DNA from: Trichosphaerium sp. ATCC 40318
Lineage: Eukaryota; Protista; Tubulinea
Assembly: GCA_038496445.1 (NCBI GenBank)
Contig: JALMLS010000612.1
Span: forward strand, 62,001-126,000
Length of the DNA stretch: 64,000 bases
Reading direction: 5' to 3'
Position numbers and translations under genes: made by a program. Shown here one piece after another: positions 36,313-55,200 of this stretch. How positions within the stretch are numbered: position 1 is the first letter of the stretch; each line of letters starts with the position of its first letter. The notes below the pieces were generated by a model that worked only from the letters and a program-made list of their open reading frames with translations, had not been told where the DNA came from and ran no database searches.

Positions 36313-38919
36313 ATGTCCACAACACAAACACGCGGTAAGTCAAGCGCCACTGGTCCACGAACACGCCGCAAGGAGTCACAACTCAAGTCAATTGCCATTT
36401 CCGCCGACTTGATGAATGTACCTTCTAAAAAGAGTGCAAAGTCTGGTAGACGCAAACAACGAAGGAAAAAGTCAGTTTCAAGGCGACAAAAGAAAAGTAC
36501 AAAGTAGAAAGTGACCAAATTCGCTCTAACATTATCGCAGCCTCTCGTTCTGCTAAGGTGGAGTTCTCACAGCTCACAATTGCAAAAAAATATTATGATG
36601 GTGTTACACTGGACATAAATGGAGGGTCGAAAGGTCCTGCTCTTGAATACAACTCAAAATCGAAGGAGCTCATAGTACCAGCAGTATATAAAGACACTCC
36701 TGTACGTAAACAAAATGAAAAATTGTTCTAACGATCTTGATACAGGTAGAAGTCGTTATTTTTGCGCCAGCAGGAAGTAGGGAGCACTTATGGAAGGAAT
36801 TGTGCAGTGTTACAGAGTCACAACCTCACATTCGTCGATTTTATGCTTACGGCTTTAAAGACATGTTCTTTGCAGGTAACGAAGTACCTTCCTTTCTATC
36901 GTAACAATGTAATACGGTTGCAAACCTATTTTGATTGTTATTTCCTTGTTTTGCATTATACCACTTTACTGACGCATCGCCGATTTCTCAAACTTATTGC
37001 TAAACAATTAAACAATCAGGTGGCGGAGAAGAAAAGTGGTCAGTCGAGAAAGCTCCGTTCTTAATTGTAGAGCCTAGAGGAAGAAACCTAAGAGATTTTA
37101 TGAAGCGTGATGGCGGTTTCGCTAATCTAGCAGAGGTATTGCTTCGTCATTTTATTTGTGTTTTTTTCATTTTTTTCTTTAATTTTCTGTTTAAGGCCAT
37201 AAATGCTGCAATGAGCTTAGCTCAGGCACTTGATCATCTTCATTCGAGAGGCATTGTATTATGTGACATTAAGCCGTCAAAGATATATGTCGATAAGCAC
37301 AGGACACCAAAGTTTGCTGATTTTAGGTAAGCTTTTTTTATATCCATAAAAACCTTCTCATTGGTTTCGTGTAGATATGCGTTTCTCTACGAACGAGAAA
37401 TGACTACTGGTGGATGTACACCTCTTTGGGCCAGTCCTGAAATGTTACATGTATTCATGTCTGCTCATCCTGATGATAAACATGTCAAAGCAAAGCGTGT
37501 CACTCCAAAAACAGACGTACAAAAGATGGATTTTTTTTTGCAACATGTTGCTTCTAAAACACTCTAGATTTTCTCTTTTGGATACCTTCTTTGGCTTTTA
37601 TTGTGGTCGACCACCACAAGTACCTACGTAGAGCCATACCCTGACTTGCAAAATTTAGAAGAGCTTCAGCATGGTAGGTTTATAATGACGTGGTGTACAC
37701 TAAGAATAAATAATAGCAATCACAAGTCACAAAGGCAGACCTGAGCTGCCAAAAGATACGTCAACTGAAATACGCGAAGTAAGTTCCCTCCTTATACTGA
37801 CTTGGTTCTTTTTGTAAATAATAACGCATTTAGGTCGTGTATGGTTGTTGGCAAACAAATGTATGGGAAAGAGCAGATGCACGGTATGTTACAACAGTTT
37901 GATTTGTTTTTTTTTTCCTTACTTTTTTGTAAAGTATGCTGGTAAACAGTTTGAAAGAAGTGCTGCTTGCTCTTGATCCTACGAGGCACGAAGTCCAATT
38001 TATAGGTAAACGGTTATTCATACATTCCTATATTGTATTCACATTATCATAGGCACTGATAAACTAGCCTGGACAGGTTCAGGACGTCTTGTACAACAGG
38101 TACATTCCTTTTTATTTGATTATTTTCCTCATGTTGTACAAGAAAATCTTGTGGAGCAAAGCTCCTACATTCTTGCTTTTTGTATCTACCTAGTACTAAT
38201 GTGGTTTGATAGCCTATCAATGTTGGTGACAAGATTAGAGTGTTTGACCTATGTCGTATTTCGACATCGATGAGGGAGTTTAAGCGTAAGAATATTGTAT
38301 TATTTATATCACCAAGTCTATACTTTCCTGGTGTAGATAATAATATCTCATCTCTTTCGGAAATAGCTTGTAGCTATGAAAATACAAAGGTTATGGTTGT
38401 TACACAAGATTTACCTTGGTACGTCTTTTTTTAAACAATAAATTGTTTTCTCGGCTTTTTTGGTTCCCACGTGATTGATGTTTATTTAAACAAAACAAAA
38501 AAAACATCAATAACATGGATACCCTAGAAGACAAGTATCTAGTTGACCCTAAAGCGTTTATGGCGCCAAACTTTTTTCTCTTTTTTTTTTATTAATCGTT
38601 TCTCTGTGCTTTTTAGCAATTGTTTTACGTTAGTGAGATGGTTAATTTACTTTATAGGGCTATTTTAAATAAACAAGATGAACTGGCGTCTTACGATAAC
38701 GTCGGCATTTTTAGCGCTTTTGGAAAGCAAGGGAATTTTATTGATACGATGAAAACAGAAGTTTCAGGACCTTTAAAAGGTCTAACTACTGTCGCTATCT
38801 ATGTTTTAGATGATTCTAACACGGTAGTATACCGTGACGTACCTGAAAGGGTACCTCATCGACCAGAATATGGTAAAATAAGGGAAGCATTAGAAAAACT
38901 CCCTTCAACCGGTGTTTGA
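36313..38919 (+). CDS. Predicted pseudokinase (TKL-like fold) fused to a C-terminal bacterial-type thiol peroxidase (Tpx) domain lacking the peroxidatic Cys
   Basis: Kinase: LHSRGIVLCDIKPSKI, KFADFR, TPLWASPE, KTD-IFSFG, RPELP, CW...ER; in-frame spliced link to PINVGDK...VLFISPSL...VVTQDLPW...GPLKGL...VLDDSNTVVY...PEY, a clear Tpx pattern. Confidence 0.8.
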
Positions 38920-48359: not shown

Positions 48360-49342
48360 ATGGGTGGTTTATTCGGAAAGAAAAAGAAGAAGAACAAGAG
48401 CAACGACAGTAGTTTAAACGTAAATGGATCTGACGCAAACAAACAATCAACTCTGATCAAAGTGTTAACTATAGGCGATTCAGGTACTAATAAAGCGCTA
48501 GCAACCATAAATTCTCCATTTGTGATTGTTAATGGAATAACTCAATAGGTGTTGGAAAAAGTTCGTTGTTGTTGCGCTACAGCGAAGATATATTTCAGGA
48601 AGGTTATGTATCAATTGGAACAGATTTTGTAAGCGTCTTTTAAAAAGTTGTCAATTAAAAAGAACCACAACTCTAAAACGGGCTTTAGAAAGTAAAAGAT
48701 ATTACGTTCAACAACAACGGAGACGATACGAACCTTAAAGTTCAGATATGGGACACTGCAGGGCAAGAAAGGTGAGTTTTTCTGATAATTATTTTCAAAA
48801 CGATTTTTTGGTGCAAGAAGTTTATCATGACGCAATTTTTTAGGTTCCGTACAATTACTTCAAGTTACTATAGAGGAGCTGAGATTATTCTTGCAAGTTT
48901 TGATATAACCAAGCAAGACACCTTTCAAAATCTTCAAAAATGGTTACAAGAGGTCAGCCGTTATGCTGATAGCAATGTTACTATTGTAATTGTAGGCTGT
49001 AAAAACGTACGGTCTTATTTTTTTTTTCTTCTTTTCAATTAAAAATGACGTTTACGTGCTTGGTAATTTTATTAAAACGGTGCTCCTAGGATCTTGGAAG
49101 CGAAAGAGAGGTTACAGAAGATGTTGCGCAAGTGAGTAGTGACAGTCTTGCAAATTATTTTCGTTTGTTTTTAATTAATGATTGTTTAGAAATTGGCTAT
49201 TGACAATGGCATGAAATACGTTGAGTGCTCCAGTAAAACAGGAGATAATATAAACCTCACAATCAACACAGCGCTCGTAGAGCACTTTGCAAATAAGAAT
49301 AGACTCGAGATGGGCGGCGCTGGGCGAATGGACGAGTTTTAA
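48360..49342 (+). CDS. Rab1-related small GTPase with N-terminal MG + polybasic anchor and no C-terminal cysteines
   Basis: [39 protein letters not shown], ECSSK; starts MGGLFGKKKKK and ends GGAGRMDEF*. Confidence 0.9.
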
Positions 49343-49571
49343 AAAAGCAAAACGAAAAAACACTTTAAACACAGTGTTTATTTATTTAGCGTACATAATG
49401 AAGCTAGATTGTAAGATAAAGTGACAGATAACATTGCCACGAGCTAAGGCGTGTTTTTTTGATCGTGTGAATGACATTTGAAAAAAACAACGCAGCGAAC
49501 TTTTGTTGACCTTCTTTTTTCTCCGTTCCCAAGAACTTTTCCGTTGATTACTGAACGTACAAATACTAAAA

Positions 49572-52082
49572 ATGGGACAGCAAGTACCAAAGATTGCACT
49601 AGAGAAATGTATAATAACGAACAGTGTGCAAAACACAATGTTAACCGACTAATAGTTAGTGAGCATGAAATAGAACAGTTGGAGCTAAACTACAGGAAGC
49701 TTATTGCAAGGAAAAAGACTGGGTCAAGGTTTCACATTCGAGATAACCTCAAGAGCACCTTCACGGATAGGGGACTTGATAGAAAGGAGTTTAAACAACA
49801 TTTCTTTAAAAGTACACTATTTGTAACCAACTCCTTCTGACATGCGTACAAGAATACCCGGAGCTAGCTGATGCACTGTATGCCGCGTTTGATACTGAAA
49901 AAACAGGTTCAATAGACTTTCAGTGCGTTTATCGTACTTCTGCTGCATTTTAAGTATGTTAGGCACTTCGCAGCTGGTATGGCATTATGCTCAAAGGGTT
50001 ATAATCACGAAAAATACAACCGTAAGCTAAAACCTGCTAATTCTTTATTTTTGTTTTTTTCAACAAACAAAACACAACTTGACGCCTGATCTCTACCCGA
50101 TTGTTAATTTTCCTAGTCCTTTTTAATATGTTTGACAAGGATTGTAGTGGATCTATTGACGTTAAAGAACTAGAGTACGGGAATTATGTTTGTTGAACAA
50201 ACACGTGCTGACTTGCTATAGGGCGTTGTTTAGCAGTACTTTGTTTGCCACTGATAAAATCGTAAAAGCCGCTGTTGAGACATTTGAACAACGTGCGTTC
50301 ATATGTTATTCCCTTATGTTTTTAAAGTGTATTTTGCTTATAATTTTTAGAGAATGAGAACACATACTTGGAAGCACTTTATGACTATACAGCTTCTTCT
50401 GCAAACGAAATGTCATTTAAGAAAAATGATATTTTAGTACTTCATAAAAAATTTGATAATGTTTGGTGGTGGGCACAGAGTGGTTCAACAAAAGGATATG
50501 TGCCATCAAACTATGTTAAAATAGTCGAAGATAATGCATCAATCAAGGATAGGATACCAAAACGTGCTGGTGAGTACCTTAGCGACCAAAAGGGTTTTTT
50601 TGGGCAAATCGTTGCTGTTTATTGACTTCTTTGTTTTTTTTTCTAGGTGCTTCAAACCTTGACTTGAAAACTACTGCAAAAAAGCTAGCCCAAAAAGTAA
50701 TGAAAGAAGCTGACGGAAATAATTCACAACAAATCTCTAGAGAAGAATGTACGCACAATATGTTTGACTTGTTAAATACTAGTCTAGTAACGCTTTGTGC
50801 CTACAGGGAAAACTTGGGCTGCAACGTCTTATGAAGTGTCTATCATGTTAAAGGAATTTGATCACTTTGAGCTTCCAATTCCTGGCTGTGCGTAAAAGAA
50901 AGCAAACTATTACTTTTTTGGTTTATTTTTTTGGGTTTGGTCTGATTTCTTGTTTTTTTTCTCTAGCGTTTGCCATATCATCACCTACACAGTTCGCACA
51001 TAGAACACATTTGAGTGGTTCAGGTAACTTTGGTGTTGATGAATTACCTGCAGAATGGAAGGACCTTTTAAAACAAGCTGGTATTTCAAAGAAAGAAGCT
51101 CAGGTACTTTGTTTGTTCAGCTTAAGATCTCAGTTTAGTGACGATGTGATTAGGATCCAGAAGTTCAAAAGATGGTTCTTGGTATTGTAGCAGAGCATGT
51201 ACCAAATGCAAAAGAGAACTCTCAGGTTCGTTCAAAGCAGAGGAGCATCATAAGATTCTAACTTTTTTTTTGAAGGCTAAAAAAAGACCTACAGCAGAAC
51301 ATGGTACTTCTACGCCACCTACGGTACCTCCTAAGCGTCATAAGCCATTACCAAAACCGTAAGTAATATTTAAGACCAATTAATCGTTATACTAACAACT
51401 TGTTATAGTGGTAAACCTCATAAACCAGTTAAACCAAACAGGGTACATTATCAAAAACAATTTGCCGTGTTTGATAGTTTTTTAGAAACCACGACCTCCA
51501 CCAAAGAGGCCTGAATCAAAGCCTAAATACAAGCCAGAACCAAATTTAACTACCACTGGACCACCGCCACCACCGCCTGTTCCACAACCTGTTGCAAAGG
51601 TTGAGCCTGTTGCGACTACATCTCCTACACCTGCTGCACCTAAGCGTCCTGCGGTTGGAGGATTTCTTGCTGAAATACAAACTGGAAAGAAGCTACATCA
51701 TACTGAAGTTAATGAAGATAAGCCAGAACCAACAGATTCTAACCCATTACTTGCTGGTATTAAGAATTTCTCAAAGAAGAAACTCGTACACGTGCGTAAC
51801 AAAAGATTTTTGTTTACTGTTAGTGTATTTTTTTGATTAACTCGTTTGGATTAGGTTGATCCAGAAGATGCTGACCTTAAGCAGCTTGACGATCAACAAT
51901 TGAATGGCTTAGCAGGTCTTCTAAGTAAAGCAATTGCATCGAGACGAGAGTTTATGACAGAGAGCACAAGTAAGTTCGATTGCCATAAAAAACTTGATAT
52001 TGGTTTACTATTGTTCACCTCTTAATATTTTTGTACAGATAATGCTGATGAAGACGAAGATGACGAAGAGTGGTCTGATTGA
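49572..52082 (+). CDS. WASP-family Arp2/3 activator with N-terminal NCS/recoverin-like EF-hand domain containing an inserted SH3, then CRIB, Pro-rich, WH2-WH2, C and acidic domains
   Basis: MGQQVPK; EF loops DTEKTGSIDFQH, DKDCSGSIDVKE, DGNNSQQISREE; SH3 ALYDY...WW...GYVPSNYV; CRIB ISSPTQFAHRTH..LPAEWK; FLAEIQTGKKLHH, LLAGIKNFSKKKL; LSKAIASRR; ends DEDDEEWSD*. Confidence 0.88.
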
Positions 52083-52228
52083 TGTATTACAATATTGTCC
52101 TATAAATAAGAACCCAACAACTGCTCATGTTACCGTCTTTTTTGGATTTATCTCATAAACAAAGTTGTTTTCAACTGTTTGAGGGGTTGACTATTTTATT
52201 TCTTTAATATTACACTAGTATTACAATT

Positions 52229-55200
52229 TTACTTAGTTTCTAGAAGGCTAGTTTGTGCTTGTGTATTATACTTATCAAGTATTTTTATAATACGTTCAAA
52301 AGAAGGCCTTTCATCAGGATCGAAAGACCAACATTCAAGCAACAGACTTGCAAGCCATGAAGGTGTACGTGGTGGGAGTATAGGGTGATAGCCTTCATCA
52401 CGAATCTTTGTTAAAGTAGTCAAAATATCTTGGTGTGAGGCATGTGGTTCCTTTCCTGCCTGTTTGAGAAACACGTGATTAGAAATACAGTGGCTTGAAG
52501 AAAAGTTTAAAGTTTTACCAGTAATTCGTATGCTACACATCCAAACATCCATGTATCTGAAGCTATGGAGTATGTTCGCTTTAAAGACTCTGGTGCCATC
52601 CACCTAGAATATTGAAATTAGTATGGACGACAATAACAGAAAGTACGGTTTGACTGAAAGTTCGTTTGAAAAAGCGTACCTGACAGGTCCTACAGTTGTT
52701 TTAGTCTTGCCTTCACCTGATCTAACAGTTCTAGAAAACCCAAAATCTGATACCTTAGGTATCAGTGTATTATTAGATTCTTGTAAAAGAATATTTCTAC
52801 ACGCCAAGTCCCTGTAACAACAATGTCAAAAGGTTGTTTTCATGCCAATATTTTGCTATCTACCTGTGAATAATTTTCTCCTTGTGTATGTGTAGTACGC
52901 CACGTGCTATACCTAATAACATGGAATGACACGTCTCAATACTAATTAGAGGCCTTGAAAAAGCTATAGCATCTAGAGACCCTCCAGAAAGGAACCTGCA
53001 TTGTATGAATCAATAAACGGTTAAACCAAAACTAGGAACAAAAGAAGAAACTTACTCCATAACAATAGCTGTTGTAGTTTCATCTAGTATTATGCCATAC
53101 ATTTGAACTACGTTTGGATGTGGTCTTTGATTCATAACACTAATTTCGGATACAAAGTCAGCAAGTACTTCTTGCTGTACTTGTAATCCTGTTTTCACAG
53201 CAACATGAATGGCTCTCCACTTCCTTTTGATAAAACAACTTATTGATACAATTCTTGTGCTAATTAACGTGTCTTACCCTTTATGTACGACCCCGTAGTT
53301 ACCTCTACCTAACTCTGTACCTATTAAGACTTCGCTAGAGTCAATCTTCCATCTCTTAAGAGCATCGTTTCCGTTATCTTTCTCATACTTATCACAAACA
53401 CTACGAATAGCTTCTTCTTTTGTTTCAAGCGATGTGTTGTCGTATACAGTCGCCTCTAGAAGCATAAAGTTAAAACACACCAGATCGCTAGTAAATTCTG
53501 AAGAAAAGAATCGTATATCGCTGTAGTAGCAACTAGGGACGATTTAGGATTTTTTTAATCTTACCAATACTATATCTCTTTTTGGTTTTAATAACAATAA
53601 CGACTGTAATGATGGCGATGATTATAATCACTGGTATAGCCACACCAAAAAATATAGGTAATATATTTCGCACATCCTCTTGTATTTGATTATTTTGAGG
53701 CCGTTCTGTGGGTGGTACAGGCGGAAGAATATCAACTAGTTAAGAAAAAAATGAGAATTTGGATGTAAATGAAAAAAAAAAAGATACATACGTTGCCAAT
53801 GTTGGACGTATGGTAATGCGTCTGAAGATAGAAATTGATTCGTAAAAGTAACCCAAAGTGAATTTACGCTTTCTATTATTATATCTCCAGGCACTATCAT
53901 TGCAGGCGTTAGGTAACAGATACTTCTTTGCTTTTTTTGTTTTGGTTGCTGGAGAAAATTACGTACTTCCAACAGCGAATATGCCTCCATCAGTGATGCC
54001 TTCAGATACGTATAATAATTCTACTTCATCTCGGCCTTTAATAACCAAGTAGAAAGGCTCATATCCACGTGGTGTAAGACCTCCAAAAGCGTACCCGAGA
54101 ACGCACATGTCTCCTTCAGGGTGTATTGAATAAGGGCCGAAACCGTGGATGTATAGATTTCCTATATCTACATCTACGAGTTCTATATTATAATACTCTT
54201 GTATGTTATCAACGGTGTAGTTAAACATGTGTATTGTAGCTAATACAAACAATTAAACAAATAACAAAGCTGGGTTCTGAAAAGAAAAAAGTGTGAGGAA
54301 AATCATTATCACTACCTTTAATAGATGTAAGTAAGACTTCGGCTATTATTTGGGGTGATTGAATGATCGGGTTAGTCAAACCTATATAAAATCGTAAATA
54401 TTGATCACGTGATGTTTTTACGTACTAACTACGAGCTGTTCTTTGTTCTCGATTTGTGTAAAAAAGAAATGAGATAAAAATTTAAGGTCAAGCCTATCTC
54501 CTTTTGTGTTGTTTATAGGGTTTATAATGGGCCCAATATCATTAAAATTCGTATCTAATGTCTTGATAAATAATTGATCTCCTTCAAGCCAACCCATTAC
54601 AAGACTTTGTCCATTCAATACAATCTTTGGACTTGTTATTGAGGCGTTTCTTAGAATAATCCTTTCATTCGTAATAACATCTCTCTCGATTCTTCGGAGA
54701 TGTAATACTGTATCATTTACATACTTCACATCAACTATAATACATGTAGTATTATCTTCGAACACTTCAAAATCCATTAACTGACGAAACAGAAAATCAG
54801 AGTTCTTCCTTTAAAAACAGAATTAATAACATCATTTAATTTAAAGTGATACATCGCTGCAATAGAAAACCGTACCACGAGCTTGATGAGTACAAGAACG
54901 TATTGTTGTATGAATTAGAGAATTTTTCTCTAAGCAGTTGATGAAAAAGTAAAAAATGTGTCAGTAACACAGCAGTCAGCTACTCGCCTGAAACTGCCGT
55001 ATGTGATACTTTAAGGTTTGTATTTCAACAGGAAGATCGAAACAGATATGCACAATAAGTACATTAAACGCAATTATCATAGAAAATATGTGCCGTGATC
55101 TTTTCAGCAAAAAAGGAACTTTAAATTCCTTTTTTAAGAGCATCAACACCTTTTTCCGTCGAATGAATAGGCCAAATCTGCTTAAACAGTGATGTACTAC

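What the first reader, a model, noticed from the sequence alone, without database searches (positions are those of the whole stretch)
49572..52082. Calcium-sensor WASP: NCS-type EF-hand domain with an SH3 inserted between EF3 and EF4 replaces WH1
Seen: exon phases are consistent with one ORF: MG start, recoverin/frequenin-like domain (EF3 DKDCSGSIDVKE and EF4 DGNNSQQISREE canonical, EF2 ending in His), a complete SH3 in the EF3-EF4 loop, CRIB/GBD, poly-Pro, two WH2, a central helix and an acidic DEEWSD end. Established: WASP proteins normally start with WH1 and are switched by Cdc42/Rac at the CRIB; NCS proteins can act as Ca2+-myristoyl switches. Inference: an Arp2/3 activator that directly integrates Ca2+ and Rho-GTPase input, with the internal SH3 possibly clamping its own Pro-rich region. 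I do not recognise this architecture from described nucleation-promoting factors.
Basis: partly seen in the sequence, partly recalled or inferred. Interest (0 to 1): 0.8.

Follow-up and report, generated by a model that had tools for sequence, protein, structure and literature searches.

The report
EF-hand/SH3-headed WASP-like actin nucleation factor
A marine amoeba (Trichosphaerium) makes a single mRNA for a protein that joins a calcium-sensor-like EF-hand domain, with an SH3 domain looped into it, to the Rac-binding and Arp2/3-activating parts of WASP; I found no published description of this layout, and calcium control of it is only inferred.

Summary
A 16-exon, 547-residue gene lies at 49572-52082 (+), with every intron GT-AG and 40-95 nt long.

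- **One transcript.** Two transcript contigs from separate studies (1743 and 1705 nt) each carry all 15 splice joints. That includes 50887>50967, the joint between the EF/SH3 half and the CRIB-VCA half.
- **Public record.** An unannotated MMETSP0405 peptide of Trichosphaerium sp. ATCC 40318 is identical to my spliced model.
- **Domains above Pfam cut-offs.** EF-hand, SH3 and PBD/CRIB all pass.
- **EF hands.** EF3 and EF4 fit the PROSITE EF-hand pattern. EF1 is degenerate and EF2 ends in His.
- **SH3.** It sits in the EF3-EF4 linker on its own phase 1-1 exon.
- **VCA tail.** The evidence is motif-level: WH2-1 is below the Pfam cut-off and WH2-2 gets no profile hit. The C region is predicted helical, and the tail ends DEEWSD.
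- **Not supported.** The N-terminus fails the N-myristoylation consensus. "NCS-type" cannot be told apart from calcineurin-B or troponin-C types.
- **Relatives.** I found none, but my searches were of limited sensitivity.

The scan had already noted the same architecture on another scaffold of this genome (s1-393417, s1-387283, s1-387410).

Best reading: a WH1-less WASP-family Arp2/3 activator with a new regulatory head. Ca2+ gating is plausible but untested.

The parts
49572..52082 (+). Whole coding region: 16 exons, 547 aa (transcript runs from at or before 49490 to about 52121-52174)
   Evidence: Manual splice model. All 15 joints are in spliced contigs of 3 studies. Identical to public peptide P0151 and to transcript contig L001.
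49572..50355 (+). EF-hand head, N part (aa 1-152): N-terminal helix, degenerate EF1, EF2, EF3
   Evidence: Pfam EF-hand_6 3.8e-11 and EF-hand_1 2.2e-10. PDB phmmer hits to calcineurin B, troponin C, KChIP1, GCAP and recoverin at 1e-10 to 1e-6, with a gapless EF2-EF3 alignment to KChIP1. The helix-loop-helix pattern appears in the AF2 models.
49891..49966 (+). EF2 loop DTEKTGSIDFQH (aa 78-89, split by intron 3). Non-canonical: Glu at loop position 3, His at position 12
   Evidence: Read directly from the sequence. No PS00018 match.
50134..50169 (+). EF3 loop DKDCSGSIDVKE (aa 114-125), canonical
   Evidence: PS00018 match. Best Pfam EF-hand stretch.
50351..50569 (+). Exon 7 (aa 151-224): complete SH3 domain (core 50368-50526) on one symmetric phase 1-1 exon, lying in the EF3-EF4 linker
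   Evidence: Pfam SH3_1 2.9e-14. AF2 pLDDT 94-98. Foldseek and VIA matches to SH3 domains: TM 0.9, Z 11, including amoebozoan myosin-I SH3. ALYDY, E170, WW, G199, P202, N204 and Y205 are all conserved. Intron phases.
50545..50887 (+). EF4 part of the head (aa 216-285): entering helix, loop DGNNSQQISREE (50712-50747), exit helix
   Evidence: PS00018 match. Pfam EF-hand_1 21.6 bits, 1.4e-4, below the cut-off when scanned alone. Weak alignments to EF4 of hippocalcin and to the DGK-alpha EF hand. Helices 227-246 and 255-273 in the models.
50888..50966 (+). Intron 9 (79 nt, phase 1): boundary between the EF/SH3 head and the WASP-like body
   Evidence: Joint 50887>50967 is present in contigs of X1, X3 and X4 and in L001.
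50975..51019 (+). CRIB motif ISSPTQFAHRTHLSG (aa 288-302)
   Evidence: Pfam PBD 2.2e-9, 37.9 bits against a cut-off of 21.3. Aligns to the Entamoeba PAK CRIB and the N-WASP CRIB.
51044..51198 (+). GBD helices LPAEWKDLLKQAGISKKEAQDPEVQKMVLGIVAEH (aa 311-345)
   Evidence: Aligns to N-WASP GBD 8s5t_A over query residues 9-64 of the piece 280-547. AF2 helices 313-321, 326-329 and 332-345 at pLDDT 73-80.
51276..51650 (+). Basic proline-rich region (aa 355-448): 34% Pro, 21 Lys+Arg, six PxxPx[KR] motifs and one [RK]xxPxxP motif
   Evidence: Composition and motif count. Predicted disordered.
51657..51710 (+). WH2-1 GGFLAEIQTGKKLHHTEV (aa 451-468)
   Evidence: Pfam WH2 17-18.4 bits, E 0.0017-0.0048, below the cut-off of 23.1. 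Aligns to N-WASP WH2 in 6uhc_H.
51741..51857 (+). WH2-2 candidate NPLLAGIKNFSKKKLVHV (aa 479-496, split by intron 14)
   Evidence: Motif level only. No Pfam hit. Aligned to the second N-WASP WH2 within a non-significant alignment.
51900..51956 (+). Central (C) helix LNGLAGLLSKAIASRREFM (aa 511-529)
   Evidence: The pattern L-x3-L-x3-I-x2-RR fits the C-domain description in PMC3298513. AF2 helix 508-532 at pLDDT 61-72. Aligned to the N-WASP C region.
51969..52079 (+). Acidic tail NNADEDEDDEEWSD (aa 534-547, split by intron 15)
   Evidence: Read directly from the sequence. Trp is third from the end, as in WASP-family A regions (PMC3298513).

Best explanation
This is an expressed gene of the amoebozoan Trichosphaerium sp. 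It encodes a WH1-less WASP-family nucleation-promoting factor.

The C-terminal body is CRIB/GBD, a basic proline-rich region, one or two WH2 motifs, a central helix, and an acidic tail with Trp. It most likely works as in WASP/N-WASP and the Dictyostelium WASP-B/C type proteins. The GBD holds the C helix in an autoinhibited fold. A GTP-bound Rac-type GTPase at the CRIB releases the VCA. The VCA then delivers actin monomers and activates Arp2/3.

In place of WH1 there is a four-EF-hand head of the NCS/calcineurin-B kind. Only the EF3-EF4 pair looks able to bind Ca2+, and a ligand-competent SH3 domain is inserted in the linker between those two hands.

My most likely reading of the head is a regulatory and targeting module:
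- The SH3 binds PxxPx[KR] motifs, either its own six in cis (extra autoinhibition) or those of neighbouring molecules (clustering).
- Ca2+ occupancy of EF3/EF4, which flank the SH3, changes how the head is presented.

Shown here: the gene, the single mRNA, the domain identities, and the absence of WH1. Inferred: Arp2/3 activation, Rac binding, Ca2+ binding, and any coupling between them.
For: - One mRNA: full-length spliced contigs in two independent studies, plus partial ones in a third. The MMETSP transcript L001 and peptide P0151 are identical to the model.
- Pfam above curated cut-offs: EF-hand_1 51.6 bits, SH3_1 48 bits, PBD 34.5 bits. No WH1 hit at E<=1.
- EF3 and EF4 match PS00018.
- EF2-EF3 aligns without gaps to KChIP1. 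Recoverin aligns over residues 42-129.
- The SH3 fold is confident, with all ligand-binding residues kept.
- CRIB and GBD helices align to N-WASP and PAK.
- The order PRR > WH2 > WH2 > C > acidic-W matches N-WASP and the family description in PMC3298513.
- AF2 predicts the GBD helices and a 25-residue C helix in otherwise disordered sequence.
- WH1-less GBD+WCA proteins that bind Rac GTPases are known in Amoebozoa: Dictyostelium WASP-B/C (PMC8305917) and WAWH (PMC3298513).
Against: - The VCA rests on motifs. WH2-1 is below Pfam's cut-off, WH2-2 has no profile hit, and the VCA piece alone gives no significant PDB hit.
- The EF part of both AF2 models has low confidence (pLDDT 45-70), because I had no EF-hand homologues for the alignment. 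That EF3 and EF4 still pair around the inserted SH3 is therefore not shown.
- EF1 and EF2 are degenerate. In calcineurin B and KChIPs the EF3/EF4 sites are high-affinity, largely structural sites (my own knowledge), so Ca2+ may not act as a switch.
- There is no myristoylation consensus.
- No basic region lies upstream of the CRIB.
- I found no orthologues, so conservation of the Ca2+ ligands and the VCA could not be checked.
Confidence: 0.55

Rival explanations
1. Same WASP-like activator, but the EF/SH3 head is a constitutive scaffold. EF3/EF4 bind Ca2+ (or nothing) structurally, as in the C-terminal pair of calcineurin B or KChIPs. The head simply replaces WH1 as a partner-docking or targeting module: the SH3 binds a proline-rich partner and the EF groove binds a target helix. 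Regulation then comes from Rac and SH3/PRR interactions only, not from Ca2+ transients.
For: Only one EF pair is canonical, and EF1/EF2 are degenerate. The myristoyl-switch consensus is absent. The head is no closer to switch-type NCS proteins than to calcineurin B or troponin C. The SH3 is intact and resembles amoebozoan myosin-I SH3 domains, which dock proline-rich partners.
Against: Both EF3 and EF4 keep every canonical ligand position, including the bidentate Glu at position 12. That would be unexpected if Ca2+ binding were irrelevant. Placing the SH3 exactly between the two Ca2+-binding hands invites conformational coupling, though this is inference.
Confidence: 0.3
2. The protein is a Rac effector or adaptor, not an Arp2/3 activator. 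On this reading the WH2-C-A-like tail is a chance or decayed resemblance, and the protein acts through its SH3, PRR and CRIB only.
For: WH2-1 is sub-threshold and WH2-2 is undetected by Pfam. There is no significant sequence hit of residues 445-547 to any solved WASP-family VCA. The alignment of the tail to N-WASP is not significant by itself.
Against: All four VCA elements occur in the right order and spacing directly after a Pro-rich region and a GBD. The C motif has the hydrophobic i, i+4, i+8 pattern followed by RR and is predicted helical. Trp sits in an acidic run at the very C-terminus. VCA elements are short linear motifs that profile searches routinely miss (my own knowledge).
Confidence: 0.1
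3. Gene-model artefact: two neighbouring genes, an EF/SH3 gene and a CRIB-VCA gene, wrongly read as one.
For: None found. De novo assemblies can merge neighbours: L001 does join the upstream Ras-like gene to this one.
Against: The 50887>50967 joint is a precise GT-AG splice that keeps the frame. It lies inside single contigs from three runs of two studies that also carry the other 14 joints. There is no stop and no start between the halves in the spliced ORF.
Confidence: 0.02

Closest known systems
WASP / N-WASP (and Dictyostelium WASP A)
   Same: CRIB plus autoinhibitory GBD helices, a proline-rich region, tandem WH2 motifs as in N-WASP, a central helix, and an acidic tail with Trp. The order and spacing align to N-WASP.
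   Different: No WH1/EVH1 domain and no basic region upstream of the CRIB. The first 285 residues are an EF-hand head with an inserted SH3. Basic residues are instead merged into the Pro-rich region downstream of the GBD.
WAWH proteins ('WASP without WH1', Kollmar et al. 2012, PMC3298513), including Dictyostelium WASP-B and WASP-C (PMC8305917)
   Same: Amoebozoan proteins with GBD, PRR and VCA but no WH1. The Dictyostelium WASP-B GBD binds several Rac GTPases.
   Different: None of the three described WAWH types has EF hands or an SH3. Type I is simply WASP minus WH1. Type II has N-terminal CxxC motifs, a Ser-rich stretch and a coiled coil. Type III has a charged region of about 800 residues. 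None of these features is present here. Whether this protein groups phylogenetically with WAWH was not tested.
Four-EF-hand sensors of the NCS / KChIP / calcineurin-B kind
   Same: An N-terminal Met-Gly, about 60 residues with a non-binding EF1, and EF2-EF3 with the short 'S.kG..EK' linker aligning without gaps to KChIP1. EF3 and EF4 are canonical, and EF4 is in register with hippocalcin EF4.
   Different: An SH3 is inserted in the EF3-EF4 linker and the domain is fused to a WASP body. There is no CPxG in EF1, EF2 ends in His, and the myristoylation pattern is not met. The scores do not separate NCS from calcineurin B or troponin C.
SH3-based control of WASP proteins in trans (Nck/Grb2 on N-WASP; Sla1, Bbc1, Bzz1 and myosin-I SH3 on yeast Las17). 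From my own knowledge.
   Same: An SH3 domain and a PxxP-rich WASP region are in the same system. Here there are six PxxPx[KR] motifs and an intact SH3.
   Different: Here the SH3 is part of the same polypeptide and sits inside a Ca2+-binding domain. Whether it binds in cis is untested.
Pan1/End3 and intersectin (EH-domain endocytic scaffolds linked to Arp2/3). From my own knowledge.
   Same: EF-hand-derived domains combined with actin-assembly motifs (Pan1) or with SH3 domains that recruit N-WASP (intersectin).
   Different: The head here is not an EH domain. Pfam EH scores 14.4 bits against a cut-off of 22. It also has a CRIB/GBD, which those proteins lack.

Membership tests
WASP family (sensu PMC3298513: proline-rich region plus C-terminal VCA) | WH2 (V) motif(s) | tested here: inconclusive
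   WH2-1 scores 17-18.4 bits against a Pfam cut-off of 23.1. WH2-2 has no hit. Both fit the LLxxI...L[KH][KH][VT] motif and align to the N-WASP WH2s.
WASP family (sensu PMC3298513: proline-rich region plus C-terminal VCA) | Central (C) amphipathic helix followed by an Arg/Lys doublet | tested here: met
   L514-x3-L518-x3-I522-x2-RR fits the pattern quoted. AF2 predicts helix 508-532. This is motif level only.
WASP family (sensu PMC3298513: proline-rich region plus C-terminal VCA) | Acidic C-terminus with Trp near the end | tested here: met
   The tail reads ADEDEDDEEWSD, with W545 of 547.
WASP family (sensu PMC3298513: proline-rich region plus C-terminal VCA) | Proline-rich region upstream of the VCA | tested here: met
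   Residues 355-448 are 34% Pro and include a PPPPPP run.
WASP family (sensu PMC3298513: proline-rich region plus C-terminal VCA) | Activates Arp2/3 complex | not testable with these tools
   Needs a pyrene-actin assay.
WASP subfamily proper (WASP/N-WASP/Las17) | N-terminal WH1/EVH1 domain | tested here: not met
   No WH1 hit in Pfam at E<=1. The N-terminus is occupied by EF hands and an SH3.
WASP subfamily proper (WASP/N-WASP/Las17) | CRIB plus autoinhibitory GBD | tested here: met
   Pfam PBD 37.9 bits against a cut-off of 21.3. Aligns to the N-WASP GBD through the third helix.
WAWH (WASP without WH1) | GBD, PRR and VCA without WH1 | tested here: met
WAWH (WASP without WH1) | One of the three described layouts: type I basic region before the GBD; type II CxxC motifs plus coiled coil; type III charged region of about 800 aa | tested here: not met
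   Residues 270-287 before the CRIB hold one Lys. There is no CxxC at the N-terminus, no long charged region, and the protein is 547 aa (sequence; definitions).
WAWH (WASP without WH1) | Phylogenetic grouping with Dictyostelium/Entamoeba WAWH sequences | not tested
   No WAWH sequences were available to me as references.
Neuronal calcium sensor (NCS) family | Four EF hands in one compact domain of about 190 aa, with EF1 inactive | tested here: inconclusive
   Four helix-loop-helix units are predicted, and EF1 is degenerate. The domain is interrupted by an SH3, the fold confidence is low, and the scores equal those for calcineurin B and troponin C.
Neuronal calcium sensor (NCS) family | Cys-Pro (CPxG) in the EF1 loop | tested here: not met
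   No Cys in residues 1-95. The EF1 region reads FTDRGLDRKEF (sequence).
Neuronal calcium sensor (NCS) family | N-myristoylation consensus MGxxxS/T | tested here: not met
   The N-terminus is MGQQVPK, with Pro at the Ser/Thr position. The PROSITE PS00008-type pattern is false.
Neuronal calcium sensor (NCS) family | Ca2+ binding and a Ca2+-induced conformational change | not testable with these tools
   The only evidence is that the EF3 and EF4 loops are canonical.
SH3 domain | SH3 fold with the ALYDY, WW, P and NY ligand-binding residues | tested here: met
   Pfam 2.9e-14. pLDDT 94-98. TM about 0.9 and Z 11 to solved SH3 domains. Residue check.

The most novel reading that the evidence does not exclude
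The protein is a coincidence detector that makes Arp2/3 activation directly Ca2+-dependent. In low Ca2+, the EF3-SH3-EF4 unit clamps the protein's own basic PxxP region, or the EF groove binds its own amphipathic WH2 or C helix. Ca2+ binding to the two hands that flank the SH3 releases this clamp, so full activity needs both a Ca2+ rise and Rac-GTP at the CRIB. I know of no nucleation-promoting factor with a built-in Ca2+ sensor.
Probability: 0.22. Interest if true: 0.8.

Novelty: new variant of a known kind. Interest (0 to 1): 0.55.

Why it matters
Branched-actin assembly and Ca2+ signalling are both central to amoeboid movement and phagocytosis. In the described systems, however, Ca2+ reaches Arp2/3 activators only indirectly. 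A WASP-type activator with its own EF-hand sensor, and with an SH3 wired between the two Ca2+-binding hands, would be a simple, testable case of direct coupling.

It is also a natural example of a domain inserted inside an EF-hand pair. The SH3 sits on a single symmetric exon, which points to exon shuffling as the route.

Other notes from this scan report VCA-like tails on unrelated proteins in the same genome. If those hold, this adds to a picture of Trichosphaerium as a lineage that recombines the Arp2/3-activating module freely, which bears on how nucleation-promoting-factor families arise.

Even the conservative reading extends the known range of WH1-less WASP relatives (WAWH) by a fourth layout.

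Tried and rejected
1. **Relatives.**
   - A word-indexed search with the full protein, with residues 1-152 in full-length context, and with the piece 1-290 found only the protein's own cluster plus SH3-only matches.
   - I spent the exhaustive HMMER search on the SH3 exon, to obtain a protein id. Its top 150 hits are multi-SH3 proteins, so it says nothing about orthologues.
   - ESM Atlas feature searches gave only noise-level hits (0.80, or none), after four refusals because the service was busy.
   - Scans of metagenome and viral contigs found nothing.
   - My own degenerate DNA pattern (EF3 loop, gap, ALYDY, gap, WW) matches the gene's transcript L001 but returned nothing from metagenome contigs, not even the JGI record of L001. 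That blank is therefore uninformative.
2. **Fold of the EF head.** AF2 had only SH3 rows in its alignment, so the EF part scored pLDDT 45-70. Foldseek, VIA-wide and Atlas fold searches were filled by SH3 matches or had TM below 0.35. The fold of the head is therefore not tested beyond secondary structure.
3. **VCA by sequence.** The piece 445-547 gave no WASP-family hit against PDB.
4. **Rejected ideas.**
   - The two-gene artefact is ruled out.
   - An EH-domain identity for the head is ruled out (Pfam EH 14.4 bits, below the cut-off of 22).
   - A giant-virus origin has no support: there is no viral relative and the gene has 15 spliceosomal introns.
   - A Ca2+-myristoyl switch is unlikely because the consensus is not met.
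5. **The 540-aa variant P0008.** It cannot be derived from this locus by GT-AG splicing and is on no contig on record. Its origin is left open.

Full report
**What is there.** Reading 49200-52500 and its three forward frames, I spliced a 16-exon gene on the + strand from 49572 to 52082. All 15 introns are GT-AG and 40-95 nt long. The ORF is 1644 nt, or 547 aa. The ATG at 49572 is preceded by an in-frame TGA at 49545 with no ATG between them. Local GC is about 37%. The short introns and that GC content fit the published Trichosphaerium sp. draft genome, which has GC 37.69%, a mean intron of 75 bp and 8.7 introns per gene (PMC10521059).

Public runs hold spliced contigs of this locus. When laid on 49450-52250, a single 1743-nt contig of run X1 (study P1, 2015) and a single 1705-nt contig of X3 (study P3, 2023) each carry all 15 joints exactly as modelled. 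That includes 50887>50967, between the EF/SH3 half and the CRIB-VCA half. X4 and X2 (a third study) carry subsets. No alternative joint was reported, and in particular no skipping of the SH3 exon. These contigs lack the introns, so they derive from RNA. Independently, the collection holds a 547-aa peptide, P0151, from the MMETSP0405 transcriptome of Trichosphaerium sp. ATCC 40318 (taxid 498012, Amoebozoa). It is identical to my model. Its 2282-nt transcript contig L001 maps back to the window exon by exon. The two-gene artefact is excluded.

**The head (aa 1-285).**
- Pfam finds EF-hand_1 (3.5e-14, three stretches) and SH3_1 (9.4e-13), both above curated cut-offs, and no WH1.
- EF3 (DKDCSGSIDVKE, aa 114-125) and EF4 (DGNNSQQISREE, aa 246-257) match PROSITE PS00018.
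- EF2 (DTEKTGSIDFQH) has Glu at loop position 3 and His at position 12, and does not match.
- The EF1 region (FTDRGLDRKEF) is degenerate.
- Against solved structures, residues 1-152 hit calcineurin B, troponin C, KChIP1, GCAP1/2, NCS-1, hippocalcin and recoverin at 1e-10 to 1e-6. The EF2-EF3 alignment to KChIP1 is gapless, and recoverin aligns over 42-129.
- Residues 216-290 align weakly, but in register, to EF4 of hippocalcin and to the DGK-alpha EF hand.

The head is therefore a four-EF-hand domain of the NCS/calcineurin-B kind. The scores do not single out NCS. Two NCS hallmarks are missing: the CPxG in EF1, and the MGxxxS/T myristoylation consensus (the N-terminus is MGQQVPK).

**The SH3 (aa about 155-209).**
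- It lies between the EF3 exit helix and the EF4 entering helix.
- AF2 models it at pLDDT 94-98.
- It superposes on solved SH3 domains at TM about 0.9 and Z 11. Myosin-I SH3 domains of Entamoeba and Acanthamoeba are among the best matches.
- It keeps ALYDY, the RT-loop Glu, WW, Gly, Pro and Asn-Tyr.
- It is encoded whole on exon 7 (219 nt), a symmetric phase 1-1 exon. The head/body boundary intron is also phase 1.

This exon layout is compatible with assembly by exon shuffling. It is weak evidence, because 8 of the 15 introns are phase 1.

**The body (aa 286-547).**
- The CRIB ISSPTQFAHRTHLSG and the following helices score 37.9 bits on Pfam PBD against a cut-off of 21.3. They align to the Entamoeba PAK and N-WASP GBDs.
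- Next comes a basic Pro-rich region with 34% Pro, 21 Lys/Arg and six PxxPx[KR] motifs.
- Then WH2-1 (GGFLAEIQTGKKLHHTEV; 17-18 bits, below the 23.1 cut-off), a second WH2-like motif with no profile hit, and a central motif L-x3-L-x3-I-x2-RR.
- The tail reads ADEDEDDEEWSD.
- Order and spacing follow N-WASP and the family description of Kollmar et al. (PMC3298513).
- In a full-length AF2 run, the only ordered parts outside the head are the GBD helices (pLDDT 73-80) and a helix at 508-532 (61-72).

The VCA piece alone finds no WASP-family chain in the PDB by sequence. The VCA is therefore supported at motif level, not statistically.

**Relatives and literature.** None of my searches found a relative with this head or this architecture. 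All were limited in reach, and one failed its own positive control. Absence is not shown. The scan's notebook lists the same architecture on another scaffold of this genome (s1-393417, s1-387283, s1-387410). A follow-up there states that a few other protists have relatives, which I could not verify. In the paper library I found no nucleation-promoting factor with EF hands. The three WAWH types (WH1-less WASP proteins) have no EF hand or SH3. Reviews of CRIB proteins in protozoa and of Dictyostelium Rho signalling mention none either. The Trichosphaerium genome paper does not discuss WASP or actin regulators.

**How it most likely works.** By analogy with WASP/N-WASP and Dictyostelium WASP-B, whose GBD binds several Racs (PMC8305917), the GBD should hold the C helix until a GTP-bound Rac binds the CRIB. 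The WH2-C-A tail would then activate Arp2/3. The head replaces WH1 as the input or targeting module. Its SH3 has many candidate ligands in the protein's own basic PxxP region, in cis or between molecules. The two canonical Ca2+ loops flank the SH3, so Ca2+ could change SH3 presentation. Each of these steps is inference. A sober rival is that EF3/EF4 are structural sites, as in calcineurin B and KChIPs, and the head is a constitutive scaffold.

**Verdict.** I file it as a new variant of a known kind, a WH1-less WASP-family protein with an EF-hand/SH3 head.

Noticed in passing
window 50351-50569 (exon 7) and introns 6, 7 and 9: The whole SH3 domain sits on one symmetric phase 1-1 exon. The EF-head/CRIB boundary intron is also phase 1. 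Skipping exon 7 would keep the frame and restore an uninterrupted EF3-EF4 pair, but no such joint appears in the transcript contigs.
   Followed up: partly
window 48827-49342 (+) and L001:1-540: The upstream neighbour is a Ras/Rab-like small GTPase gene (Pfam Ras 1.1e-14 on one exon). The MMETSP transcript contig L001 runs from its spliced last exons through the 230-nt spacer into the WASP-like gene. This is either read-through transcription or an assembly merge.
   Followed up: partly
P0008 versus P0151, aa 60-66 and the C-terminus: A second peptide from the same transcriptome is identical except that KQHFFKK is replaced by KL and the last two residues are missing. It cannot arise from this locus by GT-AG splicing and is on no contig on record. 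It may be an allele, the product of the second locus, or an assembly error.
   Followed up: partly
window 51737: Run X2 (2024, a different coded organism or sample) carries T>G here. This changes Asp477 to Glu between the two WH2 motifs, and suggests a second strain or population carrying the gene.
   Followed up: no
window 52229-52810 (-): The downstream neighbour on the minus strand is a tyrosine-kinase-like Ser/Thr kinase (Pfam PK_Tyr_Ser-Thr). Its stop at 52229 lies about 55-110 nt from the 3' end of the WASP-like transcript (52121-52174), so the two genes converge with nearly touching 3' ends.
   Followed up: no
same genome, other scaffolds (scan notes s1-390495, s1-397182, s1-400907, s1-400978, s1-401078, s1-397445): The scan's notes list several unrelated Trichosphaerium proteins that end in, or contain, WASP-like VCA tails: a calpain-III array, a vWA/TPR protein, a STAND NTPase, an F-box protein and a SAM-WASP. 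If these hold, the Arp2/3-activating module is unusually mobile in this genome. I did not check them.
   Followed up: no
window 36313-38919: The scan's notes mention a pseudokinase fused to a cysteine-less Tpx-type thiol peroxidase domain in this same window (s1-390768). I did not examine it.
   Followed up: no
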